A stretch of 64,000 nucleotides of DNA from positions 5,952,001 to 6,016,000 of the forward strand of contig NC_043024.1 in NCBI RefSeq assembly GCF_006345805.1. The letters are read 5' to 3'. Every line of letters starts with the position of its first letter. The stretch's first letter is position 1. The DNA comes from Octopus sinensis (lineage: Eukaryota). Below the pieces are notes generated by a model. It was not told the DNA's origin and searched no databases. It saw nothing but the letters and a program-made list of their open reading frames with translations. Below are positions 13,296 to 61,595 of the stretch, in pieces. Both the position numbers and the translations under genes were made by a program.

Positions 13296-13316
13296 CCGTT
13301 TCGTTTGGCAACATGG
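13296..13316 (-). CDS. Candidate 21-nt phase 1-1 micro-exon (xMLPNET), or terminal exon xMLPNETGE*
   Basis: Strong acceptor ttttcttcttttaattttctctctcag and donor CGG|gtgaat; unique sequence. Confidence 0.3.
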
Positions 13317-13513
13317 CTGAGAGAGAAAATTAAAAGAAGAAAAGTACCTTAGGGGGGAGCAGTCGCTAAACTAAATATAAATGCAGTGACGGGGGGGAAA
13401 GGGTGGGGTGGGGGCGTGTGCATTGGGGGTGCCTCACACATATGTAAATATTATATAAACCAGTTAAAACGCTCCTTTCAACTCTCCTATATTTATATTT
13501 CATATGCGGAACC

Positions 13514-13563
13514 CTACAGTTTCACTCGCCTCGCTGCTTCTAGCTCCTGTTTCCTGACAAACT
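13514..13563 (-). CDS. Candidate terminal coding exon (E)FVRKQELEAARRVKL*
   Basis: Acceptor atatttgctgcag; phase-1 frame reads to TAG; acceptor only moderate. Confidence 0.22.
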
Positions 13564-13909
13564 CTGCAGCAAATATTTTTATAATTTAATGGTTTCATTT
13601 CAACGAGGGAGGCCTCTACATGATCCCTTGACCTGTTAGAAGTAACAGCTAAATTTAGCATGAGTAACGCTTTGCTGTTTTACAAGTGGAATGAAGGCCG
13701 AATTGTTTGGTCGTAAACCAGTGTTTCTCAACCCGTTTTTTTTTTATGGAACCCTTTTGACCCCTATTTCTTGATACCTATTTTTTGCTTATGGAATCCT
13801 TTGACCCCTATTCTTTTTATCCCTACTTTATTCTACTGGACCCTCATAACAATTCAATGTTTAAATAAAATCCTGTTATATTTTTAACGATTTAATTTTA
13901 TTAGGACTT

Positions 13910-14556
13910 TATTTTTTTACTTGTTTCAGTCATTAGACTGTGGCCATGCTGGGGCACCAACTTCTTGAAGGATTTTAAACTGAACAAATCCAACTAACCA
14001 CTTTTATTTTGAAACCCGCTACTCATTCTGTTGGTCTCTTGTGCTGAACTGCTAGGTTATGAGGATGTAAACATACCAACAGCGTGAAGAGGTGGTGGGG
14101 GACACACAAACACACACACATCTATACATATACATACATACACAAACATATCTATACATATACCAATACACACACAAAGGAGAGAAAAAAAATGTGTGTA
14201 GAGCTAACAATCTATCATGGTGATCTCTACATATATACGATGGGTTTCTTTCAGTTTCCGTCCACCAAATCTACTCACAAGGTTTTGGTTGGCCCGAGGC
14301 TATAGTAGAAGACATTTGCCCAAGGTGCCATGCAGTGGGAATGAACCCGAAACCATGTGGCTGTTAAGCAAGCTACTTTATTTCAAAACATTTGCCATAA
14401 AGGCAGTACACAGATTAAGTTAGCTTTGCGGGCTGGACGAGGACATTAATGAAGTGAATGATAATGAAAGACAGATGATAAGGATGGGAGAAGACAAAAA
14501 GCGCCCGCCGACTTTCGCTTCTCTAAAACAAGCTACTTACCACACAGCCACTCCTA
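13910..14556 (-). mobile_element. SINE family A interrupted by a 150-bp insertion
   Basis: SINE head split at duplicated CAAGCTACTT (14369-14378 and 14529-14538). Confidence 0.85.
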
Positions 14557-15301
14557 CAAAAATATAAAATATTTTGCATTTTGTGCATTGTAATCAGAGT
14601 AACCTTCATAATTTTACTGAATTAGGTACATATTTTGCCATAAAAGGAAAATGTTACTATCGATCTGTTTTATTCAGGGTAGGCACTGCCTACCTTGCCT
14701 ACCCAGGCTGCATGTCCCTGATAAATACTGAAGTTGGTTCATTCAAGAAAATATTCTTCAAGACAGTGCTCTAGCATGGCCGCAGTCTACTGACTGAAAT
14801 GAGTCAAAAGGTAATTGCTATTAATTTTAAGCACTAAACCACTATAGCAAGAAAGATGTGTGTGTGTCTGTGTGTAATGAGGGGAGGGTAATCAGTCCCA
14901 TTGACTAGATGGAATTCTGGTTTAAATACTCCATATAACGCCTCATAACTTCTTTTTTTTTGCTGGAATTTTCAGAACTTTTTTCGAATCTGTGTTCTAT
15001 AAACAAGAATTCATACTTTTGCTCTTATTTTCTTATTTTCTGGAGCATCACCTTGAAGGGTCCTTTCTTTTAGTCAAAGAAACTGACCCCAGGACTTATT
15101 CTTTGTAAGCCTGGTACTTATTCAATCCATCTCTTTTGATGAACCACTAAGTTATGGGGATGTAAACACACCAACACCAGTTGACAAGCAGTGGTGGGGG
15201 ACAAACAAGCTATGAAGGGTTAAATGGGTTGCTTAAACCAGAATTCCGCCACTGACCCCTAGTATTAACAGAGATTGACTAAAAAGTTAAAAAAAGCACA
15301 T

Positions 15302-15665
15302 AGGCGCAGGAGTGGCTGTGTGTTAAGTAGCTTGCTTACGAACAACACGTGGCACCTTGGGCAAATGTCTTCTACTATAGCCCCGGGCCGACCAAGGCCT
15401 TGTGAGTATATGTATATGCATAATATATATATATGTGTGTGTGTGTGTATGTTTGTGTGTGTATGTTTGTGTGTCTGTTTGTCCTCCCAACATTGCTTGA
15501 CAAGTGATGCTGGTATGTTTGCGTCCCTGTAACTTGGTAGTTCGGCAAAAGACACCGATAGAATAAGTACTAGGCTTACAAAGAATAAGTCCTGGGGTCA
15601 ATTTGCTCAACTAAAGGCGGTGCTCCAGCATGGCCACAGTCAGAAGACAGAAACAAGTAAAAGAG
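15302..15665 (+). mobile_element. SINE family A with internal deletions
   Basis: Head AGGCGCAGGAGTGGCTGTG; B-box region deleted; intact 3' half. Confidence 0.88.
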
Positions 15666-16173
15666 AGAGCAATAAGATGGAAAGCTGACCTCGGCAGGAT
15701 TTGAACTTGGAGTAACAAAAGATATAAACAAAAAAAGGAAGATAACTACAGCACACATGTTTTCTAAAGCTTTAACAATTTTACTCAGCTATGACATTAC
15801 AGAACACAACAACAACCACTTCTGCCACTGTTACATTCCACAAAAGAGCAACAGTTACGAGTTTATATCAACAAGCAATTAGCCAAGGCGTCATCCTACA
15901 ACCTGCCCTTTTTATTGACAACATTACAGTCTATGGGTCTTTATCAAGTTGGCATTTATTGTTCCTTGTGCTCTTCATGTTTTGTTTTTCCCATTTATAT
16001 AATCATTCTACTTCTCCATCTCATTTTCCACATCATCATAATTTAACCATTGTACATTATCCTTCCTTCAACAAATCCATCCAGAGACCTTCTTAGAATC
16101 TTGCCCACAGAGCGACACAGATACTTGCCTGTCTCTCTCTCTCATATATATATATATATAATATATATATATA

Positions 16174-16403
16174 CTTTATTTTAAGCAGCAGAAAATTCAA
16201 CAAAATCTGTTACTCTGAGTTTCTCGTTGCCGTTCATCAGACAGTTTTTGCTAGCAAAAACTGTCTGATGAACGGCAACGAGAAACTCAGAGTAACAGAT
16301 TTTGTTGAATTTTCTGCTGCTTAAAATAAAGCATATTACTCTACCACTGGTATTTGAGTACTCTTTTTTCCACCTTGTTTCACATTTATGTGTTTACTCC
16401 GGT
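16174..16403. mobile_element. Penelope-like terminal-repeat-type element: perfect 158-bp palindrome plus unique 3' extension
   Basis: Arms 16174-16252 and 16253-16331 are exact reverse complements with no spacer; AATAAA follows the hammerhead core. Confidence 0.7.
16256..16302 (+). ncRNA. Minimal type-I hammerhead ribozyme motif (mirror copy on - at 16203-16249)
   Basis: Stem I CTGT/ACAG, core CTGATGA, stem II CG-GCAA-CG with A.A at the core-proximal pair, GAAA, stem III CTC-A-GAG, cleavage triplet GTA. Confidence 0.7.
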
Positions 16404-16431
16404 ATATATATATATATATATATTATATTCA

Positions 16432-16548
16432 CAGCAATCCCTTGGCTATCGCGAGTGTTACGTTCCAAAACTCCCACAGAAATAATTAAAATCTACAAAA
16501 ATATAATTAACTATCGGCTGCAGAAACACCGCGATATACTGAGGGGTT
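16432..16548. mobile_element. Tc1/mariner (Tigger-like) MITE remnant
   Basis: CAGCAATCCCTTGGCTATCGCG..TTACGTTCC start and CGCGATATACTGAGGG inverted counterpart. Confidence 0.5.
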
Positions 16549-16574
16549 CGTGACTCTCATGGTGTTGCTACATG

Positions 16575-16897
16575 ATTTTACTTCACGAATGCTTTTTAGC
16601 AATTGACATTTGGTGCATGAGAGAGTTTGATGCAGCTGCCCTCATCTGCACCTCCTGCTGTGAAGTTTGTTCATCGGGACACCTGACAGTAAGAGAGCCA
16701 GTTTTATTTTAAAGACATCTGCATCCACCCCATGCAGGTCTCTCAGGTCCTTTGGGAGGATATTGAAAAGTTGTGGACCTCTGAAGCCCAGGCTGTCACA
16801 GTATCTTGATGGCAAATTTGGAGTCCTTGGCACTATGCAGTGGCGCCCAGTTCTAGTATTTGTGTAACTCTCGATGCCAAAGTTTGGACAAGTCCTT
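16575..16897 (-). pseudogene. LINE (CR1/L2-related) ORF2 C-terminus and 3' end
   Basis: Translates ...RTGRHCIVP...GFRGPQLFNILPKDLRDLHGVDADVFKIKLALLLSGVP, followed by GCAGCTGCATCAAACTCTCT (AAASNSL-type end). Confidence 0.75.
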
Positions 16898-16926
16898 CCA
16901 TATATGTGTGTGTGTGTGTGTGTGTG

Positions 16927-16994
<68 letters not shown>

Positions 16995-17224
16995 CACGCA
17001 CATCTATAACAATATGTGGTCAGTCCATACAATTATACAAACACGCATATAAACACACACGTAATTGCCGCAACTAGTCACATAATAAACACAAAAGACA
17101 AATACAAATACACACACCTAATTATTAAGAGTAATTAAACAAATTGATATATTTACACTCACATACGCTGACACCCTTAGCAAACACATGCATATGAGTA
17201 TTGGGAAGTCTGTGTGGGAGGAGA

Positions 17225-17602
17225 GAGAGAGAGATGATTATACATACATACATATATATACACACACACACACGTGTATACACACACACACACACACACA
17301 TATATACACACACACACACACATATATACACACACACATGTATACACACACACACACACATATATACACACACACACATGTATACACACACACACACACA
17401 CATATATACACACACACATGTATACACACACACACACACATATATACACACACACACACACATGTATACACACACACACACACATATATCAACACACACA
17501 TATATACACACACACACATGTATACACACACACACCACATATATACACCACACACATGTATACACACACACACACACATATATACACACACACCACATAT
17601 AT

Positions 17603-17637
<35 letters not shown>

Positions 17638-17653
17638 CATATACACACCACAC

Positions 17654-17744
<91 letters not shown>

Positions 17745-17797
17745 ACATACATATATATACATACAATATATACATACATATATATATATATATATAC
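17225..17797. repeat. Compound (CA)n/(TA)n microsatellite array
   Basis: Directly visible; source of the spurious HT/CV/YI ORFs. Confidence 0.95.
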
Positions 17798-18173
17798 GAG
17801 CGCGCGCAGGGCCGGTTTTAAGTGAATCAAATTCGTTCAAATTGGGTCAAGTGCCGAGAAAGGGCCTCGCGCGCACACTCAAGCGGACGACCCTATGATG
17901 AATTTTCAGTATATCACTGTGGCTAATGGTGGAGGCACAAGCCCTCAATGCTTTTTTGGCTAGGACTGGCGTACTACCCGAAGCATAAAACATCAACCTT
18001 CAGCTTTTGTAGAGTAGAGGGTCCCACTGACAGTTCTCTTCCTGGACCCCGCATTTCCTAGCGCCGTCCGTCCGAACGACTTGCACAAATGGTTTGGATA
18101 TAGTGATCAAATGTCCGTACCGCACGTTAGCTTACTCTCTTTATTAAATCGATGCTGCCTGAACAGGTGAAGT

Positions 18174-18482
18174 ATCTTTTCTGTTTGAACGGTAGTTTTT
18201 AACATAATTTCTAGGTAACTAAAAAATTTTTAACTTCGTATACTGGTAGAATGTGTTTATAAAACATCTTTTTCTCGTATGAATATGTCCCTCGTTTAAG
18301 AAACAGATTGGGTTTATTTACATTTGTGAAGAAAAAAAGATACCCTTCCCCCCACCCCTAACCCTAACTAACCCTAACCCTAAAAGAGATTGAAATGCAA
18401 TAGATCGATTCTAGGGTCATAATTATGGGTGACAATTTCATATGACACCGCTAGAAAAAACTGCCGTTCAAACCGAAAAGAT
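18174..18482. mobile_element. MITE with ~28-bp TIRs and internal (TAACCC)-like motif
   Basis: ATCTTTTTCTGTTTGAACGGTAGTTTTT ... AAAAAACTGCCGTTCAAACCGAAAAGAT; CCCTAACCCTAACTAACCCTAACCCTAA at ~18356-18383. Confidence 0.8.
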
Positions 18483-18763
18483 CCCAGGTGAACTCTGTGT
18501 CACGCGAGATGAAGTGTTTTGTTCAAAAACACAAAATACCACCTGGTCCAGGAACTGAAATCGCGATCTAGTGGTCGTGAGAGCAATATCCAAATTACTG
18601 GGCCCTGTGTGTGTTTGTGAACTGCATACGCATACACGCTCACCCCTGCGCACACTTACAATACACAACGATAAGGAGCCTTCCTAATACTTATAACAAA
18701 AGTAATGTAAGATATCTTCATTCATTAAACACTTCATTTATTTCCTGGCCTCACACCTTAGAC

Positions 18764-18964
18764 CAGTAGTTTTCAACCAGGGTTCCGACAGTACAGTCCA
18801 GGGGTTCCGCAAGAAGTTACAAAACTGCTAAAATCGGCAGTAATTTTTAATTCTCCTGTGCAGATATGTGTGCATAAGACTATTAAATTATTGCACAAGG
18901 GTTCCTCGAGCCAGTGGAATGTTTCCTTGGGGTTCCACTCCAGCAAAAAGTTTGAAAAGCACTG
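18764..18964. mobile_element. hAT MITE, same family as 5009-5226, opposite orientation
   Basis: TIRs CAGTAGTTTTCAA / TTGAAAAGCACTG; perfect 8-bp TSD CCTTAGAC. Confidence 0.95.
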
Positions 18965-19016
18965 CCTTAGACACTCTCACCTACATATATCTAGACAACC
19001 TTTCGTATATACACGT

Positions 19017-19056
<40 letters not shown>

Positions 19057-20512
19057 TACATGACACGGATGAGCTTGGTTTCTCTTAGGAGCCTACGAAA
19101 TTTTACGTTGCAGAGGGCCGAATCAAACCGTTTTAAATCATGTGTGTGTGAGTGTGTCCATTGCTTGACAACCGGTGTTGGTGTGTTTACGACCCCGTTA
19201 TCTAGTGGTTCGGCAAATCAGACCGATAGAATATGTACCAAGCTTAAAAAAAAAAAAATTAAGTACTCGGATCGATTCATTCGACTAAGAATTCTCCAAG
19301 ATGTTGCTCTAGCATGGCCGCAGTCTAAATGACTCAAACATGTAAAAAGAGTGAGAAAGAGTAATGATTCAACTCATAACCTCAATCACTCATAAATCCA
19401 CCTTTAAGCTATGCTTACACATTCTCATAGCATTACATGTTCACATCACTCACCCATACACACACACACACACACCACACATACAGACACACTATTCTTA
19501 ATATAAGTAGGTATGCATTTTTTTAATTCGTTTTCTTGTCGGCAGTTGGTAAATTAAAGAATTTGGGCTTGATTACTTGTGTGTGTGTGTGTGTGTACAT
19601 GCATGTATGTGTTTGAGCGCGCGTTTGAGAAATTCATTGACGCTGCAGCCGACACCAACCCAACCACCAACACCACCACCATCATACCATGCTCGCAACC
19701 AATCAACCCCGTCGTCTATCCAACACCGCCGTCGACAAAGTACCCCCTCCTACCTCTACCTCTACCGCCACCTCCACCACCACTACTACTACTGCAACCC
19801 GCACGTTCACTTAGACACCCCTCCACCATCACCACTACCTCCGCCCTAGTTTCACAGCGACTCTATTCCTCCGGCTTCAACATTCCTCCCACCACTGCTA
19901 TCATCTCACTTCCTATACACTCACCATCACCACCATCATCACACTAATCCTATACTCCTACCACAGCCACTACATTAATTCTCAACTCCCTCAGCCACCA
20001 CATTAATTCGTAACTCCCACCACCATATTAACGCTATACTCCCACCGTCACTACAACCCAATTTCCACATCACCCTCGCCACCACCACCACACTTACAAT
20101 TACCAACTCATTCATACATTAGCGGTGAATGATTTATGTAGACTTATAAAAAATGTAAGCAGTTTTCAAGATCTTACATGAACTTCTCCCCACCACTTCC
20201 CTTTCACACATACAAACACAAGTTGGCAGCATTTTTCAAGACGGGTTTTTGGAAAGCACCCACATACATATTTACACACACATTCACACACCTCCATTGA
20301 AGTTCTTTGAAGTTTTTTCCGCGCGATATTACATAAGCTACACACACACACACACAAGTCAATCAAGTTTCACCTTAGCCTGATTTTTACCTTTTGATTT
20401 TGAATTTTTTACATTACATATTATAATATGGCAAGTACTTTCATCTTTTACAGCAATCTTCAGATGGTAGCTGCATCAACATACACACAACTCTGTCTCA
20501 TATATATATATA

Positions 20513-21519
20513 CTAGCAGTATCGCCCGGCGTTGCTCGGGTTGTAAGGGAAATAACTATATAAGCATTTTTAGAGAGTTATAGCCAAAAAGTAGCAAAAA
20601 AATGCATTAAAAATTGAAAAAAAATTAAGGTAAATTTTTCTTTAAATCGTTGACACATCGTAGATATTTTTAGAGAGTTACTTCCCTTATATAAAAGCGA
20701 AAAAAATGCATTAAAATGGAAAAATATGATGGTAATTTTTTTTTAAATCGTAGACTCATCGTAGACGCGCGCTAATACCCAGAAGGGCTCGTTGTTATTC
20801 TGGGTAACTTTCTGTAAAATATTAAAATTTTGTTCAAACATCGCTATAGAAAATGGGTTATTAGCTAATATTCAATTGGGTATACAACAAAATTTTACGA
20901 TAGAATTTGTTATTCTGGGTAACTTTCTGATACCCATAATAATATTTATGGCAAAATAGGCCTTAATTTCATTTAAGGTTGTGGGAAATAACAAACTATC
21001 CTTTCTTTCGGTTTGTTTACGTTTAGCGTAATGATTTCAAATAGGCTCATTCGAAAAAGTAAATAGAAATAGTCTAAGGCTTTACTCTTCTGGGAAAGTC
21101 TGTGGCTTGGTCCAGTTTCTTCAGAAAACAGTTTTTAAATTTTCACTCCATTCAGGTACCAATTCGTTTTCTTTATCGCTGTCGGATTCACTGTTTTCAC
21201 TTTAATAGCTGCAAACTTGCAAAAACAAAGGAAGAGAAGGGTGATAGCGTCAGTGAAACAATTCGCTCCCTTTGTGTGTGTGTGCGTTTGCGTGTGGTGT
21301 AAACCAGACTAAGAAAAGCATTTGACACACACACCAGAATGTGAGTTTTCTGTAAATTTTGCTTAATTGGAGTTTAAATTTTAAAAACTGGACCTGGCAT
21401 GACGCGATGCATTGTACTCTTAAAATTGCTAGGTAAATTGTAATTGAAGAAATCCTATATTGTAGATTTGTATAACTCCCAAAGGGAGGCAGATAAAATC
21501 TGCCTTTTATAATAAGAGA
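20513..21519 (-). mobile_element. Complete non-autonomous Helitron
   Basis: On -: A|TCTCTTATT... 5' end; 3' hairpin CCCG-AGCAACGC-CGGG then CGATACTG-CTAG|T; no TSD; inserted in (TA)n. Confidence 0.9.
21015..21201 (-). pseudogene. piggyBac-like transposase N-terminal fragment within the Helitron
   Basis: SENSESDSDKENELVPEWSENLKTV / (1-nt frameshift) EETGPSHRLSQKSKALDYFYLLFRMSLFEIITLNVN resembles the piggyBac GP...(P/A)L(D/Q)(Y/F)FxLFF...L...I...TN motif. Confidence 0.6.
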
Positions 21520-22264
21520 TATATATATATATAAACACACACACACACACACACATGTATATGACAAAAAAACAATTAGTTCAAAACATCATTACACGCG
21601 GTTCAATGGCATGATTTATTTTCAAATCCGAATTCAATTGCATAATATATTAGAGAACATTAAATAAATCGTTTTCTTGCATAACCATGCCATTTCATCT
21701 GGTGATATTCTCACGCATGGTAATATTTCTCCATAGCTGGGAGTTTCCACGGAAGATTGGAACGGTGAAGCTTAGTTTGCTAGTTCACAACAATCACATG
21801 ATGTCCAGACAAGGACTCAGACACACACACAAGAATACATACTAATGGCTTTTTCAGTTCCCATCTACCGACAAGAGCAAAGATAAAGAACGCTGCATTC
21901 ACAACCATCGCCAAACAGACGTTATTAACATTACTTCATTATCGCAGAGCTGACCTGGAACTAAACAACGATACTTCTATCACCACTATTACTCTATTAT
22001 CAGGACTAGCCTTAAGCTAAGTAACAAGGCTGTTTAAGATTTTAAGAATTAAAACGCGTGATTTCTATTTTAAAATAACACTGAGACGTTGTTTTGAAAA
22101 TTTAAGATAGGAGGGACTTCCACCTCCAGCGAGGGAGGAATTTCCACCTAGTCGTGAAATCTGCTAGAAATAGCAACTAACATGTCTTCAAATTAATCGC
22201 GCCACCTCATCGCCTTAATAATAATAATAATAAGAAGAAGAAGAAGAATAGTAATCTATTTTGC

Positions 22265-22815
22265 TATAGACATGAAACCCGAATTGTTTGTGGGGAGGTG
22301 TAAGTCGATTACATCGTCCCAGTGCTTCACTGGTACTTAACTTATCGACCCCGAAAGAATGAAAAGCAAAGCTGACTTCAACAAAGTAGACGGACGAATT
22401 ACTGCTAAGCATTTTGTCCGGGATGCTAACACGGTTCTGCCAGATCGCTGCCATAATAATAATAATAATCCAAGGCCTGAAACTTGTGGGGAAGAGGATG
22501 AGTCAATTACATCGGCCCCAGTGCGTAACTGGTAATTTATTGACCCCGAAAGGATGAAAGGCAAAGTCGACCCCGGTGGCGTTTGAACCCAGAACGCGAA
22601 GACAGACGAAATACCTATTTCTTTACTACCCACAAGGGACTAAACACAGAGGGAACAAACGGATTAAGTCAATTACATCGACCCAGTACGTAACTGGTAC
22701 TTAATTTATCGACCCCGAAAGGATGAAAGGCAAAGTCGACCTTGGCGGAATTTGAACTCAGAACGTAACGGCAGACGAAATGTCGGCGTGCTAACGTTTC
22801 TGCCAGCTCGCCGCC
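22265..22815 (-). mobile_element. SINE family B cluster (one single copy and one copy with duplicated body)
   Basis: Repeated GACCCCGAAAGGATGAAAGGCAAAGTCGAC; head at ~22815. Confidence 0.88.
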
Positions 22816-22837
22816 TAACAACAAAAACAACACGAAC

Positions 22838-25546: not shown

Positions 25547-25581
<35 letters not shown>

Positions 25582-49941: not shown

Positions 49942-49972
<31 letters not shown>

Positions 49973-50126: not shown

Positions 50127-50177
<51 letters not shown>

Positions 50178-51206: not shown

Positions 51207-51425
51207 ATGGCAGAATCGTTAGCACGTCGGGCGAAATGCGTAGCCGTATTTCGTCTCCCATTAAAGTTCTGAGTTCAAATTCCGCCGAGATCGACTTTGC
51301 CTTTCATCCTTTCGAGGTCGATAAATAAAGTACCAGTTTCGCACTGGGGTCGATGTAATCGACTTAATCCCTTTCTCTGACCTTGTTTGTCCCCTCTATG
51401 TTTAGCCCCTTGTGGACAATAAAGA
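51207..51425 (+). mobile_element. SINE family B
   Basis: TGGCAGAATCGTTAGC..GAGTTCAAATTCCGCCGAG. Confidence 0.92.
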
Positions 51426-51554
51426 AATATATATACGAGAGAGAGAGATTGAAATTCACGCCTCTTTATCCACTACGATCGCTTCGACGCACCATGCATC
51501 GGTACCTCGTAGGTGAGATGCTATACAAACAATTGTGGTGCACCATAGGTGCAA

Positions 51555-52040
51555 ACGGGGACGTAAACACACCAACATCGGTTGTAAAGCGATGGTGGGG
51601 GAACAAACAGACACACACACACACACATACACACATATATACGACGGGCTTCTTTCAGTTTCCGTCTTCCAGATCCACCCACAAGGCTTTTGTCGGCCTT
51701 TAATCGAGCAACTCGACCCCGGGACTTATTCTTTGTAAGCCCAGTACTTATTCTATCGGTCTCTTTTGCCGAACTGCTAAGTGACGGGGACATAAACACA
51801 CCAGCATCGGTTGTCAAGCACAGCTAGGGGGGCAAACGCAGACACACAAACATACACACACGCATATATATATACATATATACGACGGGCTTCTTTTAGT
51901 TTCCGTCTACCAACTCCACTCACAAGGCTTTGGTCGGCCCGAGGCTATAGTAGAAGACACTTGCCCAAGTGTCACGCAGAGGGACTGAACCCGGAACCAT
52001 GTGGTTGGGAAGCAAACTCTAACCACAGAGCCGCGCCTGC
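51555..52040 (-). mobile_element. SINE A fused dimer (partial plus near-full)
   Basis: Junction GTCGGCC|TTTAATCGAG at ~51697. Confidence 0.88.
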
Positions 52041-52066
52041 GTCCATATATGTATATATATGTGTGC

Positions 52067-52149
<83 letters not shown>

Positions 52150-52549
52150 CGCACACATACACACAGATAGTGGTCTGCATTATCTAATGTACCCCTGATT
52201 TGAAGGAAATGTGGCTGTTATTTCTACTAAGGTGGGCGACCTCGCTGACCCGCAACTTTTATCGTCTTCGTGGGGAGACGTCTTACGACGTGATGAGGAA
52301 AACAGAGAAAATAAAACTGTCTCCAGCTTCGATGTGATGGTCCTTATCAGGGGTGTATGGGTGGATATAAGTAATATGAATGGGTGTACTTATGATATGA
52401 AGGGTGGGATTTATAAATAGAAATCTGAAATTTAGAGATGGCAGCCCCTTTTTTGTAGAAATGGGGTCTATGTTGTGTTTATAATGATGTGAAATAGGGA
52501 AGAAGAAAAATGCGGAAAAAAATCTCAAATTTCAATTAATGGCCCTTAT

Positions 52550-53000
52550 CTGAAATTGGAAGGAAGGGAGGGAGGAAGGAAGGAAGGAAAAAATGAAATG
52601 AAGACAGAGAAGGAAAGAGAAAGAGAAAAGCGAAAAAAAGGAGAGTAAGAGATAAGGGGAAGAAAATAAGAAAGAAAGAAAGAAAAGAAAGAAGGACAAA
52701 GAATGAGAGAAAGAAAAGAGAAAGCAAGAAAGAAGCAGACAGAAAGGAAGGAAGGAAGGAAGAAAAAGAGAAAGCAAAGAAACTTAGAGAAGGGAAGAGA
52801 AAGAAAGAAAGAAGAGAGGGAGAAATGAGCAAAGAAAGAAAAAATATAGAAAAAAAGAAAAATAAAGATAAGAGAGGGGGAGAATGAAAAACGAAAAAGA
52901 AAGGAAAGAAAAAAGAAATAAAGTTGAAAAAAGAAAAGGAGAAAAAAGGAAAGAAAGAAAACGGAAAGAAACAAGAAAAAGAGAGGAGAGAAAAAAAGAG
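52550..53000. repeat. Polypurine (GAAA/GGAA) tract
   Basis: Directly visible. Confidence 0.9.
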
Positions 53001-53189
53001 GAATTGGGGGATGTTGTTTTTGAAATTCGAGAACTTTTTCCTTTTTTCTTCACGATAGACATGTCCCACGCTGGTTCCTTGTCACCATTTCTAACCCAAA
53101 CCTTAACTCGAAAAAACAACTTGTTAATCCCAAAAGATGCAAATGACTCTACCAAGGAATGGAAACCGTGTAGAATCACCACTACCTTC

Positions 53190-53224
<35 letters not shown>

Positions 53225-53579
53225 CCCCCAACCCTTAGAGGATGTCTTTACAAGGCCCCTCGGTCAGCTAGAAACAACAGCCGTCTTGAATATAAGGGAA
53301 AACGTACATATTTGATGATGTAATCTTACACATACCCAGAAATCGATGGAATGGACACGGCTAGAATGCCTCCAGTGGGTAGCCCTGGCCATAAGGTTGA
53401 ACTAGGGCTAAACAACAAACCACCTGAAGCAACCAAACAAGCCAATGCAGGATAGAGGTGGGGGGAGGAACTGTACGAGATTCGACATGCAAGAAATAGC
53501 AGCCAAATCCCCCCCACAAATCATATCCAACCGTGTCTTAAAGAATTTTCTTCACAAAATTGTCCAAGATAAATCTATG

Positions 53580-53870
53580 TTCTTTTTACTTGTTCCATTC
53601 GTTGGATTGCGGCAATGTTAAGGCACCGCCACTAGGTTATGAGAACGTTAACAAACCAACGACGGTTAACAAACCAACGACGGTTGTCAAGAGACGCGGA
53701 GACACACACACACTTGAATGGATTCCTCGCAGTTTGCATCTACCAAATTCACCCACACAGCATTGGTTGGCTTAGGGCTATAGTAGAAGACACTTGTCCA
53801 AGGTGCCACGCAGTGGGACTGAACCCGGAACCATGTGGTAAAGAACCAAACTTCATTACCACTCAGCTAT
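53580..53870 (-). mobile_element. SINE family A, diverged, with an 18-bp tandem duplication at 53647-53682
   Basis: GTTAACAAACCAACGACG x2. Confidence 0.8.
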
Positions 53871-54429
53871 AAAAAAAAAGACAGGATAGATATGGCCGGG
53901 ATGCTTTTGACCATTCGGTCATTAAGCCTCTGGCCAATATGCCGCGTGAATTGTATCGATATATCACAAGCCCTACCTGCCAGGGGCCCCAAGGCAAGTG
54001 CTCGGTCGCAAAGTGATCACAATAAGCGGCTTTCATTGCATACATATAAAACATTCTCCGTATGTATGTATAAATGTATGTGCCTTTGTGTCTGTGTTTG
54101 ACAACCGGTGTTGGTGCCGTTATGTCCCCGTAACTTAGCGTTTCAGCTAAAGAGACAGACAGAATAAGTACTAGGCTTAGAAATTAAGTACTGGCGTTGA
54201 TTTGTTCGACTAAAACCCTGCAAGGCGGTGCTCCAGCATGGCCGCAGTCAAATGACAAACAAGTAAAAGAATATTTATATAAAGTAAAGGCTATTTCGAA
54301 CAAGCTGTCCCTGTTCGTAAATACAAAAACACAGATATTGTGTCGTATAGCCAGCTGGAAGCGACGTTTCCTGGGGTTAAACAACAGTAACATTCGTCCC
54401 ATCTAGGACTGCCACACTACTTTAAACAA

Positions 54430-54955
54430 GGTATTTCGGTATTTCGTCTGCTGTTACGTTCTGAGTTTAAATTCCGCCAAGGTCGACTTTGCCTTTCATC
54501 CTTTCGAGGTCGATAAATTAAGTACCAGTTACGCACTGGGGTCGATGTAATCGACTTAATACCTATGTCTGTCCTTGTTTGTCCCCTCTATGTTTAGCCC
54601 CTTGTGGGTAATAAAGAAATAGGTATTTCGTCTGCCGCTACGTTCTGTGTTCAAATTCCGCCGAGGTCGACTTTGCCTTTCATCCTTTCGGGGTCGATAA
54701 ATTAAGTACCAGTTGCGAACTGGTGTCAATGTAATCGACTTGATCCGTTTGTCCTCTCTGTGGGTAGTACTACTTGTGGGTAGTAAAGAAATAGGTATTT
54801 CGTTTGTCTTTACGTTCTGAGTTCAAATTCCGCCGAGGTCGACTTTGCCTTTCATCCTTTCGGGGTCGATAAATTAAGCACCAGTTGCGTACTGGGGTCG
54901 ATATAATCGACTGACCCCCTCTCCCAAAATTTCGGGCCTTGTGCCTAGAGCAGAA
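54430..54955 (+). mobile_element. SINE family B, headless trimer of body units
   Basis: GGTATTTCGT restarts at ~54436, 54622 and 54793; ends with CCCAAAATTTCGGGCCTTGTGCCTAG. Confidence 0.9.
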
Positions 54956-55754
54956 ACGCCTTTACTTTAAAGAACTGTTACTGAACATCTACGAGAGAAT
55001 TAGAAATAATATTTATACACACACCACACACACACACACTTATTACATAGAAGATAAAGGAAAGACCAGATAAGAAATACGTGGGTTTGTTTTTTTTTCC
55101 TAGTTTCATTTTCTCATTTGTAGTATATCATTTTCTTTGTTTTGTTTTGTTGGTGCTGATTTCGTGAAAGGATCCTGTGTCAGTAAATTGGTCCCTTAAT
55201 TGAGTAGTAATTACATCAACAATTGCCAGTTGAAGGGGGCAGAGGGCAGAGAGAGAAAGAGAGAGAGAAGAGAGGAATAATATAACGGAATAGCGTGAAC
55301 TGAAACTCAACGACATGTCTAGTTTTCCTTTTGATTGCTTTAGGAAGTGTGTGTTTGTGTCGTACGTTTGGGTTTGCAGCAGATAATCTTTCGGTTTACG
55401 ATCACAGATTGGAAAGCGGAAAATTATCCTCAGCAGGAATGGCTATACGGTTGAGAAGTCTCGCTTTTGTAGTCACGTCGTTTCTTGAGTTGGAAAGATT
55501 TAGGAAAATAAAATAAAATTGGCCATTCGTTTACTAAAGGGTCCTTCGTCTGGCTCTAAACAGGGAAAGGAGACACCTATATATCACAGATCCACGCCTA
55601 CAAACAAGCCATCCATGCCCAACACCCTCTGATGTGGCCAGTTGATGTCACAATAACTAGATTCTTTATCAACATCTCAGAATGAATGAAGGATTTTGGT
55701 GGTTCCCGGGACAATTCTGAGAGAGAGAGAGTGTGTGAGTGTGTGTGTATGTGT

Positions 55755-55965
55755 ACTCTTTTACTTGTTTCAGTCATTTGAATGCGGCCATGCTGGAGCA
55801 CCGCCTTTAATCGAGCAACTCGACCCCGGGACTTATTCTTTGTAAGCCCAGTACTTATTCTATCGGTCTCTTTTGCCGAACCGTTAAGTGACGGGGACAT
55901 AAACACACCAGCATCGGTTGTCAAGCAATGCTAGGGGCACAAACGCAGACACACAAACACACACA

Positions 55966-56005
<40 letters not shown>

Positions 56006-56172
56006 TACGACGGGCTTCTTTCAGTTTCCTTCTACCAAATCCACTCACAAAGCTTTGGTCGGCCCGAGGCTATAGTAGAAGACACTTGCCCAAGATGCCA
56101 CGCAGTGGGACTGAACCCGGAACCATGTGGTTGGTAAACAAGCTACTTACCACACAGCCACTCCTGCGCCTG
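55755..56172 (-). mobile_element. SINE family A, full length
   Basis: Reverse consensus match. Confidence 0.95.
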
Positions 56173-56266
56173 TGTATGAGTATAATTCTGAGAAAATAGG
56201 TAGTATGTGAATGTGTGTTAGTGTATCTATGTTTCAGCGTGTGTGTGTGCGTGTGGAAGACAGTGA

Positions 56267-56300
<34 letters not shown>

Positions 56301-56790
56301 TGCGTTTGCGAGCATGCAACAGAGAACGTGAGAAACTTGTTTGTAGTTTCATGTATGAGTAGACACAGAAAAAGTTTTTAAAATGAGAGACAGAGAGAGA
56401 GAGGTGGGGGAAGAGAATGTGTGTCTGTGTGTGTGTTTATGGAAGTGGGAGTGCTAAAAGGAACTTGTTTATAAGTGTGCGTATGAAAGAAAAGACTTTG
56501 AGAATATGTGTATGAGAAGTGAGAGGGAAGTGTGTAAGAAGGGAGGGAAAGAGAGAGAGAGAGAGAGAGAGCTGTGTATGAGTGGAAAGAAAGATGTGTG
56601 TGTGTGTGTAAAAAGAATTACTGTGAGCACACGGATATAAAAAGCGAAAAATTGATAAGTTGGTCTTCATATGGGGAAAGGAAAAAAAAACATTTGAAGT
56701 GTGAGAGTGTTAAGATAGGAAGACTATAATGTCTGTGTGTTTGTGAGTGTGGAGAGACAGACAGACAGAATGTATGTGTCTGTAATGATG

Positions 56791-56844
<54 letters not shown>

Positions 56845-57075
56845 GTGTGTGTGTGTGTGTACTTGTGTGTAAAGATAACAGTAAGAGTGTGTGAGTGTAA
56901 AGATAAGAACAAGTGTGTGCGTGCGTAGATTAAAATATTTAAAAACTATGTGAAAAGAGAAGGTATGTCTAAGTTAAAATATGTGAATATGTACGAATGT
57001 GTGTGTGTGTGTGTATGTGTGTGAATACAGCTATATGAAGAGTTTGTATGTGTGTGTGTGTGTGTGTGTGTGTAT

Positions 57076-57106
<31 letters not shown>

Positions 57107-57223
57107 CCCTAAGATGTAGGGAAATTAAAAATACACGATGAATGTATTATCAGCTGGTCAATGCTGATGGTATGTACATTACGTATATACACATACACAC
57201 GGGTGTGAGTATCTATATATGTG

Positions 57224-57254
<31 letters not shown>

Positions 57255-57759
57255 TTGTTTATACACACGCAGATGTGTTTATCTATATATGTATGTTTGC
57301 TTAGTTTGTTTTTAGATAATTGTAGCTAAGGCCAGACTGGAGTGCCTCCTCCAGTTTGTATGTGAAGTTATATGTTTGTGTCAGTTTAGAAACAGACAAA
57401 AAAGTCTTCGTAAACAGAATTCTGGTTTGAGTGAGATTAAGAGAAAATTTATCGTTTAGCTCGAGTTTTACTGATCTACGAGTGTTAACAAAAGACATTC
57501 CAGCCTTAACCACCCCACCTATACTTTTCAGTTTTATCTTTTTGTTTAGGCGTAAGTGAATATTAGGACAACATTGTCCATCGTGTATTTCTTTATCAAG
57601 ACTGTGTGATTTGAAGGGGATTCAGCTGCTATTTCTAGCACACCCAGTGATTAGGCAGAAACACTCTTGTCGAGAGAGAGAGAGGAGACAGACAGACAAA
57701 CAGACAGAGCGCACGCGCAAAAGAGGGAAGAGAGGAGTGGGGGTAGGTTAAGATCGTAC

Positions 57760-57795
57760 GATTTCTTGAGAACCGGCGAAGAAATTTTGGTTTTT
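57760..57795 (-). CDS. Candidate 36-nt phase 1-1 micro-exon (E)KPKFLRRFSRN
   Basis: Strong acceptor tctctatttcttactcatttacttccgtaccatcgcag and donor ATC|gtacga; in frame with the 61511 phase-1 donor. Confidence 0.42.
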
Positions 57796-58174
57796 CTGCG
57801 ATGGTACGGAAGTAAATGAGTAAGAAATAGAGACGACCCCACCCGACCCAACGAAGGATTGACTCTGGGCTTGCCATGGCAAACTTATGGCACTCCGAGT
57901 TTTCTTCTAGACTCCTTTAGGACCTATTATCATCAAAGTCCTGAGTAATGTTGAGAAAATATTTCAAAACTTTCTTAAAATTTCACTGAAGTTTAATTCC
58001 CTAATCTTTGGGTCTACCTTTCTTCACCACTTACCCCTCTTTCTCTTTCACTCATTCTCTCCGAATTAGTCATAAACTAAACCTACAGTTTAAGGCCCCC
58101 ACAGTCTACAAGAGAGTTCCCTTCAAAATAATTAAGGGGCATCTATGTTTGTTTTAATTATTGTTTTATTTTTT

Positions 58175-58720
58175 ATTTGTTTCATGCTGGGGCACCCCAC
58201 TGAAGAGTTTAATCGAACAAATTGACTTTTTTTCCCCCTAAGTCTGGTGTTTATTGTATCGGTGACTTTTTGTTGGACAGCTAAGTTACGGACACAAACA
58301 CACCAACACCAGTTGTCAAACGGTGGTGGAGATCAGACAAAGTTTTCACGCATACACACAAACACACGACGGGCTTCTTTCAGTTTCCTTCTACCAACTC
58401 ACAAGGATTTAGTCGGCCCAAGGCTACATAGAAGACGCCCAAGGTGCTACCAGAGCCGGATTTACCATTGTGCTTAAGCACAGGGCCTTGTTGACCAGGG
58501 GCAGGCATCTTCTTGCCCCTACAGCCAATTTTTCGCGATGAATTTCTCAAATATCAAACGTTTAAATGTTTTTCCTAAAAGTTACAAAAGTGAAATTACT
58601 AATGTGAACGTTTTTACACGTTATCTTTTAACATAAAGGAGTCAAGTAGGGTCCTCATTTGTCCTAAATACGGACTGAACCCGGAACTATGTGGTTGAAA
58701 AACCAGCTTCTTACCTCACC
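58175..58720 (-). mobile_element. SINE family A interrupted by a CAGAGCCGGATTTA-type MITE (~58451-58677)
   Basis: SINE text stops at CCAAGGTGCTAC and resumes at GGACTGAACCCGG; insert ends TAAATACGGACTG. Confidence 0.65.
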
Positions 58721-59326
58721 GCTAGGGTGGCCCGCTATTATTAATTTTTTTTATTAAAGTGGACAATAATAGAGGAAGAAGTCCTACAAGTTACACAGAA
58801 AGAAGCTGAAGGTTGCCTTAAATCGAAGACCAAGCAAGAGAGTCTCCATAACAAATATTTTAGTATACATGGTGGTTGTTTTTGCACTAAAAATCGTTAT
58901 CTGTGAAATTGTCATTTTAGTTTTTTCATAAGGCTGGTAAGCCTACTTTACGCGGTCGGTGGATTTGCTAGAAATAGTAGCCAAATCTCCCTTCAAGTCA
59001 CAAACCTACTGTTCCAAAAGTAAATAGCTACGTTTATAAAGAAAATGGGGTGATAAATTTGACAATGTATTCCTAAGATACATCACGTCCTGAGAAGATA
59101 AAACGAACGAATGGTCACGGTTGGAACGCGTTTGATTAACAACAAAAGAAAGGAGGAAAGTTACAGTAGTTAAATGTGGTCCTTGAATTTATATTGTCCG
59201 AAAAAAATACTGTTCCTAGTTTTTACCCGGGTAATCCGGTTTCAATTCTCGACATGAAAACGCAGTATTTTTAAATGGTGGGACGCGAGGATGGTCACAA
59301 CTTTTGGGCCGGAACACATAAAGGAG

Positions 59327-59442
59327 CAATTTTTCGGTATTAGTAGACGACGTCATTCACCCATACAACGCTCCTTTATGACACAAAGAAGCTAAGCTGA
59401 AAAAGAGAGTGAATGACGTCATCTACCAATACCGAAAGATTG
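59327..59442. repeat. 34-bp inverted repeat (3 mismatches) with 48-bp spacer; MITE-like
   Basis: CAATTTTTCGGTATTAGTAGACGACGTCATTCAC / GTGAATGACGTCATCTACCAATACCGAAAGATTG. Confidence 0.85.
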
Positions 59443-59480
59443 TCCTGAAAGGAGTAAATAAGAATGGGATGTTCATAATG

Positions 59481-59514
59481 TGGAATCCCTTTGATAATGA
59501 TCAAAGGGATTCCA
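59481..59514. repeat. Perfect 15-bp hairpin with 4-nt loop
   Basis: TGGAATCCCTTTGAT-AATG-ATCAAAGGGATTCCA. Confidence 0.9.
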
Positions 59515-59984
59515 TGCTCAAAACACAGCTGTCGAGTTAATTAGGGATGACTAGGAAGCTGAACAACAAGAAGGGGTCACGAACATCGAATAGAATATCT
59601 TACAGGGGTTAGAAAGGTGCTTAAACTCACATACACAAATACAATATATTATAGAATCAGCTCATCTATGACAGAAAGCGCTCCAGTCGCGACACCCACG
59701 TCTGTTCGTATATCAATTATTATGTTATTTTTGTTGTTAGAGAAACATCTTGTCTTTTCAGTATAATTCCAGTCCCATCTCGAATGGTTTACGGGAAGTA
59801 TGAAATCGACCCCTCATTAACTAAACTGTTGTTTTATTTCAAGCAAACCCAGAGGGAGGTTTGGTAAAGTTTACCTTGGTGTGATTTTAATTAAGAACTC
59901 CAAGAATCGCAAGTTCCACAGGCATGTAAAATACTCTATAGGAATATTATATTAACTCTTCTGAATTTATTGCCTACAGGGGGC

Positions 59985-60375
59985 GAAACATAGAGGGGAC
60001 AAAAAAGGACAGATGAAGGGATTAAGTCGATTATATCGACCCCAGTGCGTAACTGATACTTATTTAATCGACCCCTGAAAGGATGAAAGGCAAAGTCGAC
60101 CTCGGCGGAATTTGAACTCAGAACGTAGCGGCAGATGAAATACCTATTTCTTTATTACCCACAAGGGGCTAAACACAGAGGGGACAAACAAGGACAGACA
60201 AAGGCATTAAGTCGATTATATCGACGCCAATGCGTAACTGGTTCTTAATTTATCGACCCCGAAAAGATGAAAGGCAAAGTTGACCTCGGTGGAATTTGAA
60301 CTCAGAACGTAGCGACAGACGAAATACCGCTAAGCATTTCGCCCGGCGTGCTAACCATTCTGCCAGCTCGCCGCC
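59985..60375 (-). mobile_element. SINE family B with duplicated body
   Basis: Two body units; head (reverse of GGCGGCGAGCTGGCAGAATGG) at ~60372. Confidence 0.92.
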
Positions 60376-61510
60376 CTTCTAAACTGGTATATTGTTGTTA
60401 TGCGTTCACCAACTTTACATTTTGAGTTCTTCGACTTTACTTTGCCTTTCATTCTTTCGAGATCGATAAAATAAGAATCAGTTAAGCACTGAGGTCGGTT
60501 TAATTGACCCTACAAAAACTTCAGGATTTGTGTCAGTAAGGGAAAGTATTATATACAACCCCCAGAGGGAGGATAAGCAAGAAAAGTTTACCTCGATATG
60601 ATTCGAACTCAGATTGTGAAGCTTCTTAAATTCTAATCACATCTAAGATTCTTTTATAGGAAATATTGTAGGTTCCATTTAGAACCCCGAAAGCATATTA
60701 AACTCGAACCTTCACTACTTAGCGAGTACTTTATTGTTTTTTCAATCCCGGAAGAGAAGGGATGGCCAAAAAGCAAAATGTTTAATATGGGCGAGATTTG
60801 AACTCAGAACTTGACGAAATACTATAATGAAATACCACAAAGCATCCTAACGATTCTGCCAGGATTTCGGCTGCTATTTCTAGCACATGGACTAACCACA
60901 TAGAGGCACCATCGTTAACACGTAAAGTTGTTGTTTAGCCACAGGTCGACTCTGACCGATAACGTCTATAATAAAAAGGTAATCCATCCATGACCATCCT
61001 TCCTTGGTGGAATTTTGGCATAGCTGTCCTTCGAAGTCCCTCATCTCATGGGAAAGGAAAAGTAAAGGGGAAGCTTCCGTACAAAAGTATTCCTGTATTT
61101 CATACAACGGAAATCCTAATTCCAAGAATATTTTTCCCAAAACTTAATATTTTTTTTTTTACATTTTTGGGTCCCCCCCCCCTTCCGTACTCTTTTCCTT
61201 TCCCATGAAAGTATGGGACTTCGAATAACACCTATTTTTAAAAAACACCACTTCTTAACAGGAACAAAAATGACATCAACAAAACCTATCCCTCTCTTTG
61301 AAGACGGTAAAGTGTAATTTGAGGGAGATTTGACTGTTATTTCTAGTAAATCAAGCGACCGAGTAGAGACATCAATACTGGTTATGTAGCAACGTAGCAT
61401 CAGAGAAATTTTGTTGAGTAAAGAATTTGGTTCCAGAGACGAAGAGGGAAAAAGAAAGAAGGGCGATGAAAGTAAAGGTTTATTTAAAAAAGAAATTAAA
61501 TGCAACAAAC

Positions 61511-61595
61511 CTGGACTGATATTCTGTCCAAATATTCCAGAAAGAAATAAAATAAAGTAGAGTAATATCCAAAATCCGTCACGTTTTGCGACCAT
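61511..61595 (-). CDS. Candidate first coding exon: signal peptide MVAKRDGFWILLYFILFLSGIFG-QNISP, phase-1 donor
   Basis: Kozak-like gcAGCATGG; n/h/c-region signal-peptide pattern with G|Q cleavage; donor CCAG|gtttgt followed by T-rich intron-like sequence. Confidence 0.55.

What the first reader, a model, noticed from the sequence alone, without database searches (positions are those of the whole stretch)
13296..61595. Possible minus-strand micro-exon gene for a secreted protein spanning ~48 kb
Seen: a signal-peptide exon ending in phase 1 (61511-61595), then isolated unique islands with good acceptor and donor pairs around short, frame-preserving phase 1-1 segments. These are 36 nt (57760), 48 nt (46377), 24 nt (38364), 33 nt (27839) and 21 nt (13296), plus phase-changing candidates at 49035, 49212 and 33526. 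One joined reading is MVAKRDGFWILLYFILFLSGIFGQNISP-E-KPKFLRRFSRN...GYPPMFG-G-VESTPAAPRG. Known: signal exon plus symmetric micro-exons is the architecture of Schistosoma micro-exon genes, which diversify secreted proteins by exon skipping. Inference: a similar combinatorial secreted-peptide gene may exist in a cephalopod. No homologue is recognised, and some candidate exons are certainly chance hits.
Basis: inference. Interest (0 to 1): 0.7.

Follow-up and report, generated by a model that had tools for sequence, protein, structure and literature searches.

The report
Octopus integrin beta gene, 5' end
The window holds the first two coding exons of an already annotated octopus integrin beta-1-like gene: a signal-peptide exon and one 33-base cassette micro-exon, 33.6 kb apart.

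Summary
Two of them are real exons.

- **Real exons.** An exhaustive HMMER search with the ORF that starts at ATG 61595 found XP_029652598.1, "integrin beta-1-like isoform X2 [Octopus sinensis]" (800 aa). Its N-terminus reads MVAKRDGFWILLYFILFLSGIFGQNISP|GVESTPAAPRG|EKYTSEE.
- **Rest of the gene.** From residue 40 on, nothing maps to the window, so exon 3 lies beyond the window start. The annotated gene spans 163 kb.
- **Exon skipping.** Isoforms X1 and X2 include the 33-nt exon. Isoform X3 (790 aa) and the O. vulgaris model (789 aa) skip it, so skipping of a symmetric micro-exon holds for this one exon.
- **Other candidates.** The 36-, 48-, 24- and 21-nt candidates and the phase-changing ones appear in no clustered isoform. 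Their splice scores are at chance level, and the 48-nt one is a (GGT)8 microsatellite.
- **Identity of the product.** It is a conventional type I membrane integrin beta: VWA/beta-I domain at E 1e-86, human beta-1 in the PDB at E 3.5e-165. It is not a MEG-like secreted peptide.

Already annotated; low interest.

The parts
61511..61595 (-). Coding part of exon 1 of the integrin beta-1-like gene: ATG at 61595, signal peptide MVAKRDGFWILLYFILFLSGIFGQNISP, ends in phase 1 at donor CAG|GTTTGT. The 5'UTR and transcription start were not mapped.
   Evidence: Residues 1-28 of XP_029652598.1 / XP_036370527.1 are identical. Passes a signal-peptide heuristic.
27872..61510 (-). Intron 1, 33,639 nt, phase 1. 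Rich in SINE copies and microsatellites.
   Evidence: Follows from the protein-to-window mapping. Repeat content.
27839..27871 (-). Exon 2: 33-nt symmetric (phase 1-1) cassette micro-exon encoding (G)VESTPAAPR(G). Acceptor TTTCGTTCATAG|GAG, donor GAG|GTAAGA.
   Evidence: Residues 29-39 of isoforms X1/X2 are identical. Absent from isoform X3 and from O. vulgaris CAI9741841.1. It is the only 15-60 nt open segment in the region with both splice scores this high.
1..27838 (-). 5' part of intron 2 (phase 1), which runs off the low end of the window. Exon 3 (EKYTSEEESKNPC..., start of the PSI domain) is not in the window.
   Evidence: No tblastn or 6-mer match to residues 40-800 beyond chance. Gene range is 163,100 bp.
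57760..57795 (-). Pseudo-exon with a poor donor.
   Evidence: Acceptor 3.9, donor -2.9 bits; 51 equally good segments in the region versus 51 in surrogates. Absent from all five cluster members.
46377..46424 (-). Not an exon of any clustered isoform.
38364..38387 (-). Not an exon of any clustered isoform.
   Evidence: Acceptor -0.3, donor 4.1; 24 segments as good versus 15 in surrogates. Absent from the isoforms.
13296..13316 (-). Not an exon of any clustered isoform.
   Evidence: Acceptor 7.2, donor 2.9. Absent from the isoforms. Reading through its donor reaches a stop after 2 codons.

Best explanation
The window covers the 5' 61.6 kb of the Octopus sinensis integrin beta-1-like gene, which lies on the minus strand and spans about 163 kb.

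- **Exon 1** (coding part 61595-61511) encodes the cleavable signal peptide that sends the integrin beta precursor into the ER. Cleavage after Gly23 (IFG|QN) is inferred.
- **Intron 1** is a 33.6-kb phase-1 intron full of SINEs and microsatellites.
- **Exon 2** (27871-27839) is a 33-nt micro-exon.
- **Intron 2** is a second phase-1 intron of more than 27.8 kb that leaves the window. All remaining exons lie beyond it: PSI, beta-I/VWA, I-EGF repeats, transmembrane helix and the NPxY tail.

Both introns flanking exon 2 are phase 1, so including or skipping it keeps the frame. The junction codon is GGA (Gly) with the exon and GAA (Glu) without it. Inclusion adds 11 residues (GVESTPAAPRG), rich in Ser/Thr/Pro, between the signal-peptide cleavage site and the PSI domain of the mature subunit.

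What is shown: the exon mapping, the family membership, and the existence of isoform models with and without exon 2. What is inferred: the cleavage site and any functional effect of the 11-residue insert, perhaps a flexible and possibly glycosylated N-terminal extension.

For: - **The hit.** Full HMMER search of 1.84 billion representatives with window:61119-61595:- gave one hit, P0001 (E 6.2e-8, residues 1-30 to 1-30, 97%).
- **Its N-terminus.** The P0001 sequence shows the signal exon followed at once by GVESTPAAPRG and then EKYTSEE....
- **Mapping to the window.** tblastn and 6-mer mapping place only residues 1-28 at 61595-61512 and residues 29-39 at 27872-27839. The junction codon G+GA gives Gly.
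- **Names.** Integrin beta-1-like isoforms X1/X2/X3 of O. sinensis (XP_036370527.1, XP_029652598.1, XP_036370529.1) and O. vulgaris CAI9741841.1. X3 and O. vulgaris read QNISP|EKYTSEE, the exact 11-codon skip.
- **Pfam.** Integrin_beta VWA 1.4e-86, I-EGF_1, EGF_integrin, Integrin_b_cyt.
- **PDB.** Human integrin beta-1 7nwl_B at E 3.5e-165, over residues 49-797.
- **Gene range.** 163,100 bp in GCA_006345805.1 and 156,454 bp in GCA_951406725.2.
- **The other candidates.** Chance-level splice scores and no phase-1 enrichment. No other coding signal in the window: no Pfam domain in about 9,800 aa of non-repeat ORFs on both strands.
Against: - The isoforms are computational RefSeq/UniProt models. 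I could not see RNA-seq junction reads, so inclusion levels of the 33-nt exon, and even its use in vivo, rest on the annotation.
- On sequence statistics alone, neither the signal exon nor the micro-exon was significant. Signal-like first exons occur in 42% of surrogate minus strands. The exon 1 donor scores only 1.7 bits on a human-derived PWM.
- I could not align the window itself to the O. sinensis assembly at DNA level. The species assignment rests on 39/39 identical residues, against one mismatch in O. vulgaris.
Confidence: 0.93

Rival explanations
1. One reading: a Schistosoma-MEG-like gene in which the signal exon is followed by a chain of symmetric micro-exons (36, 48, 24, 33, 21 nt and others) over 48 kb, producing a small secreted peptide that is diversified by exon skipping.
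For: The signal exon and one symmetric micro-exon are real, and that exon is skipped in some isoform models. All five candidates are frame-compatible.
Against: - The annotated products join exon 1 directly to the 33-nt exon, or to exon 3, and continue into a 790-801 aa integrin beta with a TM helix and cytoplasmic tail.
- No cluster member carries KPKFLRRFSRN, DQMSRRGSG..., GYPPMFG or MLPNET.
- The required introns (3.7-14.5 kb) exceed the 0.1-5 kb range of MEGs, and five micro-exons fall short of the 10-20 in MEGs (PMC10526429).
- Splice scores are at chance level.
- The window holds no paralogous copies.
Confidence: 0.02
2. The integrin beta gene as described, but one or more of the reader's other phase-1 symmetric candidates (most plausibly the 21-nt one at 13316-13296, or the 24- or 36-nt ones) are additional unannotated, rarely included cassette micro-exons that add further N-terminal variants.
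For: Both giant introns are phase 1, so any 3n open segment would keep the frame. The 21-nt candidate has a good acceptor (7.2 bits) and a usable donor (2.9), and ranks second on the minus strand. Micro-exons are often missed by annotation pipelines (PMC10526429).
Against: No isoform in the 90% identity cluster includes them. The number of equally good candidates matches the surrogates, and other phases and decoys yield similar ones. The 48-nt candidate is a microsatellite and the 36-nt candidate has a poor donor.
Confidence: 0.05
3. Nothing is there: the whole constellation, signal exon included, is a chance product of T-rich, repeat-rich non-coding DNA. This was my working view up.
For: Signal-like ATG exons arise in 42% of surrogate minus strands. 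The word-index protein search found nothing. The ORF's composition shows no coding signature. The AF2 model scores pLDDT 44.
Against: Exact identity of 39 consecutive residues, across a splice junction, with annotated integrin beta isoforms of O. sinensis.
Confidence: 0.01

Closest known systems
Integrin beta subunit genes (human ITGB1 / integrin beta-1; Octopus sinensis integrin beta-1-like, XP_036370527.1 / XP_029652598.1 / XP_036370529.1)
   Same: The two real exons in the window are the first 39 codons of this annotated gene. The full product has the integrin beta VWA/beta-I domain, I-EGF repeats, a TM helix and a cytoplasmic tail, and aligns end to end with human beta-1.
   Different: Homology to vertebrate beta-1 begins only at residue 49. 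The signal peptide, the 11-residue cassette and the EKYTSEEES stretch form a lineage-specific N-terminal extension ahead of the PSI domain. From general knowledge, the well-known integrin beta splice variants (beta-1A/B/C/D, beta-3 variants) alter the cytoplasmic tail, not the N-terminus.
Schistosoma micro-exon genes (MEGs)
   Same: A signal-peptide first exon, followed by a symmetric (3n) micro-exon whose skipping keeps the frame.
   Different: MEGs have 10-20 exons of 6-81 bp that make up most of the CDS, introns of 0.1-5 kb, and small secreted products of up to 189 aa (PMC10526429). Here a single micro-exon sits in a 790-801 aa membrane receptor gene, with introns of 33.6 kb and more than 27.8 kb.
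Cassette micro-exons in conventional animal genes, and intronic pseudo-exons (general knowledge)
   Same: The 33-nt exon behaves like an ordinary frame-preserving cassette micro-exon. The other candidates behave like pseudo-exons: intronic segments with plausible splice sites that are not used and that greatly outnumber real exons in long introns.
   Different: Tissue specificity and regulation (for example the neural SRRM4/eMIC programme) were not tested. No UGC motif is evident in the 30 nt upstream of the acceptor, by eye.

Membership tests
Schistosoma-type micro-exon gene (MEG) | First exon encodes an N-terminal signal peptide | tested here: met
   MVAKRDGFWILLYFILFLSGIFG|QN passes an n/h/c-region heuristic. 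It is the N-terminus of annotated proteins.
Schistosoma-type micro-exon gene (MEG) | 10-20 very short (6-81 bp), mostly 3n exons make up most of the coding sequence | tested here: not met
   Only one micro-exon (33 nt) is in the product. About 95% of the 790-801 aa is encoded by exons outside the window. Definition from PMC10526429.
Schistosoma-type micro-exon gene (MEG) | Introns of 0.1-5 kb, shorter toward the gene ends | tested here: not met
Intron 1 is 33,639 nt and intron 2 is more than 27,838 nt.
Schistosoma-type micro-exon gene (MEG) | Small secreted product without a membrane anchor | tested here: not met
   The product has a TM segment (WLVVGIIGGILFIGLLVLIIW) and the Integrin_b_cyt domain.
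Schistosoma-type micro-exon gene (MEG) | Transcript isoforms generated by skipping of symmetric micro-exons | tested here: inconclusive
   Isoform models with and without the single 33-nt exon exist.
Integrin beta subunit | Beta-I (VWA-like) domain with a MIDAS-type motif | tested here: met
   PF00362 Integrin_beta E 1.4e-86, residues 143-391. DLYFLMDLSYTM aligns to DLYYLMDLSYSM of human beta-1. This part is encoded outside the window.
Integrin beta subunit | N-terminal PSI domain, four I-EGF repeats, one TM helix, cytoplasmic tail with NPxY-type motifs | tested here: met
   Alignment to 7nwl_B covers residues 49-797, including the PSI cysteines, I-EGF_1/EGF_integrin, the TM helix and NPIY.
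Integrin beta subunit | The window's exons belong to that gene (exact match across the splice junction) | tested here: met
   39/39 residues identical to O. sinensis X1/X2. The junction codon G|GA gives Gly29.
Alternatively spliced cassette micro-exon | Length of 51 nt or less, a multiple of 3, with flanking introns in the same phase | tested here: met
   33 nt, phase 1-1.
Alternatively spliced cassette micro-exon | Both inclusion and skipping observed in transcripts | not testable with these tools
   Only predicted protein isoforms were seen: X1/X2 include the exon, X3 and O. vulgaris skip it. No read-level data.

The most novel reading that the evidence does not exclude
The two giant phase-1 introns at the 5' end of the octopus integrin beta-1-like gene might hold further unannotated symmetric cassette micro-exons, for example the 21-nt segment at 13316-13296 or the 24- and 36-nt ones. 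Together with the annotated 33-nt exon, these would combinatorially vary the extreme N-terminus of the mature integrin beta subunit ahead of the PSI domain.
Probability: 0.04. Interest if true: 0.4.

Novelty: already known. Interest (0 to 1): 0.1.

Why it matters
As it stands, this is an ordinary, already annotated gene start, so little follows from it.

Two points are mildly useful. First, cephalopod genes can place a 33-nt coding exon between introns of more than 25 kb each. That explains why some gene models lose the first exons: the 733-aa member of the cluster starts at exon 3. Second, the 11-residue Ser/Thr/Pro-rich cassette ahead of the PSI domain is an unusual position for integrin beta splice variation and could be checked for tissue specificity.

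There is also a methodological point. Splice-site and ORF statistics alone could not separate the two real exons from chance. One exhaustive protein search settled the question, after a word-index search had missed the same protein.

Tried and rejected
- **Word-index protein searches.** The 159-aa read-through ORF gave no hit at E<=10. This was a false negative, because the full HMMER search later found a 28-aa exact match. Two searches with about 5,000-aa concatenations of masked non-repeat ORFs, one for the minus strand and one for the plus strand with SINE-ORF controls, gave no hits. The controls also failed, so these negatives say little.
- **Pfam on the same concatenations.** No domain on either strand.
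- **Rfam and ARAGORN on the window.** Nothing.
- **Back-translated pattern of the signal exon in JGI metagenome contigs.** Nothing.
- **Splice-PWM null models** (PWM frequencies from memory, used as a yardstick only). No excess of phase 1-1 candidates. The statistic also rated the true exon 1 donor as weak.
- **Signal-peptide heuristic null.** Not significant. This led me, provisionally and wrongly, to treat exon 1 as chance.
- **Rival 'single long exon / 159-aa secreted protein'.** Rejected. Similarity to the real protein ends at residue 30, the amino-acid composition resembles random translation with no G1 bias, and the AF2 model has mean pLDDT 44.
- **Orthologous DNA.** Attempts to fetch it failed because both gene ranges exceed 100 kb. 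P0001 itself is not on record because only the longest isoform is indexed.
- **Literature.** No paper in the library links MEGs to cephalopods, contains the SINE sequence strings I searched for, or covers an integrin N-terminal micro-exon in octopus.


Full report
**Observation.** The minus strand carries ATG at 61595, followed by MVAKRDGFWILLYFILFLSGIFGQNISP and one extra base before CAG|GTTTGT. So the description of the sequence is accurate.

**Is it more than chance on sequence alone?** No.
- The region holds 1,630 open AG..3n..GT segments of 15-60 nt on the minus strand. First-order Markov surrogates give about 1,900 per 64 kb, against 2,017 observed.
- I scored splice sites with generic metazoan position weight matrices. 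The frequencies came from memory, so they are a yardstick only.
  - The 36-nt candidate has a poor donor (-2.9 bits).
  - The 48- and 24-nt candidates have weak acceptors (-0.6 and -0.3).
  - The numbers of equally good segments match the surrogates: 51 vs 51, 15 vs 10 and 24 vs 15.
- Phases 0 and 2 give similar counts to phase 1, although short segments are often open in several phases.
- The 48-nt candidate is a (GGT)8 microsatellite next to (TG)n.
- Only the 33-nt segment (2.7/5.9) and the 21-nt segment (7.2/2.9) have respectable site pairs. The 33-nt one was the only segment with no competitor at least as good at both sites.
- A signal-peptide-like first exon with a donor arises in 42% of third-order Markov surrogates of the minus strand.
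- The window is 37% in-window repeats. These are mainly a SINE of about 389 bp present in dozens of copies, plus many microsatellites, so 'unique islands' are simply the default between SINEs.
- No Pfam domain occurs in about 9,800 aa of non-repeat ORFs on both strands. Rfam and ARAGORN found nothing.

**What changed the picture.**
- The ATG at 61595 opens a 159-codon ORF that reads through the proposed donor, and it is the only open frame of the six there.
- I treated this as a rival hypothesis (a long first exon) and submitted it to the exhaustive HMMER search of 1.84 billion representatives. There was one hit: P0001, 800 aa, E 6.2e-8, with residues 1-30 aligned to query residues 1-30.
- Its sequence begins MVAKRDGFWILLYFILFLSGIFGQNISP GVESTPAAPRG EKYTSEEESKNPCTKHETCGQC....
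- tblastn and exact 6-mer mapping place residues 1-28 at 61595-61512 and residues 29-39 at 27872-27839. The split codon G|GA encodes Gly29. Nothing from residue 40 onward is in the window.
- Intron 1 is therefore 33,639 nt and phase 1. Intron 2 is also phase 1, exceeds 27,838 nt and leaves the window.

**Identity of the gene.**
- The 90% identity cluster of P0001 has five members:
  - XP_029652598.1, 'integrin beta-1-like isoform X2 [Octopus sinensis]';
  - isoform X1 (XP_036370527.1 and XP_036370528.1, 801 aa);
  - isoform X3 (XP_036370529.1, 790 aa);
  - O. vulgaris CAI9741841.1 (789 aa);
  - a 733-aa MetaClust entry.
- Pfam finds Integrin_beta VWA (E 1.4e-86), I-EGF_1, EGF_integrin and Integrin_b_cyt.
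- The best solved relative is human integrin beta-1 (7nwl_B, E 3.5e-165), aligned over residues 49-797 including the PSI cysteines, DLYFLMDLSYTM, the I-EGF repeats, the TM helix and NPIY.
- The gene spans 163,100 bp in GCA_006345805.1 and 156,454 bp in the O. vulgaris assembly.
- The window's exon 1 peptide is identical to O. sinensis and differs from O. vulgaris at F14L, so the window is O. sinensis or something extremely close.

**The micro-exon.** Isoforms X1 and X2 contain GVESTPAAPRG. Isoform X3 and the O. vulgaris model read QNISP|EKYTSEE, exactly 11 codons shorter, with the junction codon changing from GGA to GAA. The 33-nt exon is therefore modelled as a frame-preserving cassette. It inserts a Ser/Thr/Pro-rich stretch between the inferred signal-peptide cleavage site (after Gly23) and the PSI domain. 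That region has no counterpart in vertebrate beta-1, where homology starts at residue 49. Any functional consequence is inference only.

**The remaining candidates.** The 36-, 48- and 24-nt segments and the three phase-changing ones lie inside intron 1. The 21-nt segment lies inside intron 2. None of their peptides occurs in any of the five cluster members, and any isoform carrying such a small insertion would fall in that same 90% cluster. Given their chance-level scores, they are best read as intronic pseudo-exons. A residual possibility of a few percent is that one of them, most plausibly the 21-nt one, is a rare unannotated cassette.

**Comparison with MEGs.** According to PMC10526429, MEGs have 10-20 exons of 6-81 bp that make up most of the CDS, introns of 0.1-5 kb, and small secreted products. 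Here there is one micro-exon, introns of more than 25 kb and an 800-aa membrane receptor. The signal-exon feature is met, and the features that define the family are not. The locus works like any conventional gene with a cassette micro-exon.

**Caveats.**
- The isoforms are computational models, and I saw no reads.
- I could not fetch orthologous DNA, because both gene ranges exceed the 100-kb limit.
- The first word-index search missed the true hit. The concatenated-ORF searches are therefore weak negatives.
- The read-through 159-aa ORF is a chance extension into intron 1. Similarity to the real protein stops at residue 30, its composition resembles random translation, and the AF2 model scores pLDDT 44.

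**Verdict.** The MEG interpretation is wrong. What is there is the annotated 5' end of an octopus integrin beta gene. It is already known and of low interest.

Noticed in passing
window, e.g. 10633-11030, 8633-8997, 29029-29400, 55754-56175 (59 intervals in all): An abundant SINE with a consensus of about 389 bp. It has a B-box-like GGTTCCGGGTTCAGTCCC near the 5' end and an internal (TA/TG)n tract. The window holds about 69 BLAST pieces in both orientations at a median identity of about 85%. Intervals with at least 5 copies cover 15.2 kb (24%) of the window. ARAGORN and Rfam do not call it.
   Followed up: partly
window 18356-18383 (minus strand): A short interstitial telomere-like run, TTAGGGTTAGGG twice within 28 nt. 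Expected 0.24 matches per window, observed 3 with up to one mismatch.
   Followed up: partly
window 6549-6927: A minisatellite of a 40-bp unit (TGTGTGTGTGTGTGTCTTTATATCAGTCCGTGATCCCCTC) x 9.5 copies at 99% identity, so very recently expanded or homogenised. Also (AAT)~245 at 1201-1941.
   Followed up: no
window 16645-17019 (minus strand): A 125-codon ORF ending ...SLGFRGPQLFNILPKDLRDLHGVDADVFKIKLALLL.... It resembles the C-terminal tail motif of some non-LTR retrotransposon ORF2 proteins, but that resemblance is from memory only. It had no Pfam or protein-database hit.
   Followed up: partly
window 61119-61595 (minus strand): Exon 1 stays open for 159 codons into intron 1, and it is the only open frame of six in a 65% A+T segment. 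There is no homology beyond residue 30, no coding-like composition, and AF2 gives pLDDT 44. It looks like a chance read-through ORF that could mislead ORF-based annotation.
   Followed up: yes
window 38300-38394 (minus strand): Reading through the donor of the 24-nt candidate gives GYPPMFGGKRR (Gly plus basic residues, amidation-like), followed 14 residues later by VPSMF. At DNA level there is a short two-copy repeat (CCGATGTTCGG / TCGATGTTCTG). Probably chance; there is no signal peptide in that ORF.
   Followed up: no
outside the window (proteins P0001-P0005): Isoforms X1 and X2 differ by one Arg (EDARIKNPC vs EDAIKNPC), consistent with a 3-nt alternative splice site. The 733-aa cluster member starts at exon 3 (KYTSEEE), so its model lost exons 1-2, plausibly because of the giant introns. 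The octopus MIDAS-region motif reads DLSYT where human beta-1 has DLSYS.
   Followed up: no
method (vs 44): The word-index homology search returned nothing at E<=10 for a query that shares 28 consecutive identical residues with XP_029652598.1. The exhaustive HMMER search found that protein at E 6e-8. Negative results from the indexed search on short hydrophobic matches should not be trusted.
   Followed up: yes
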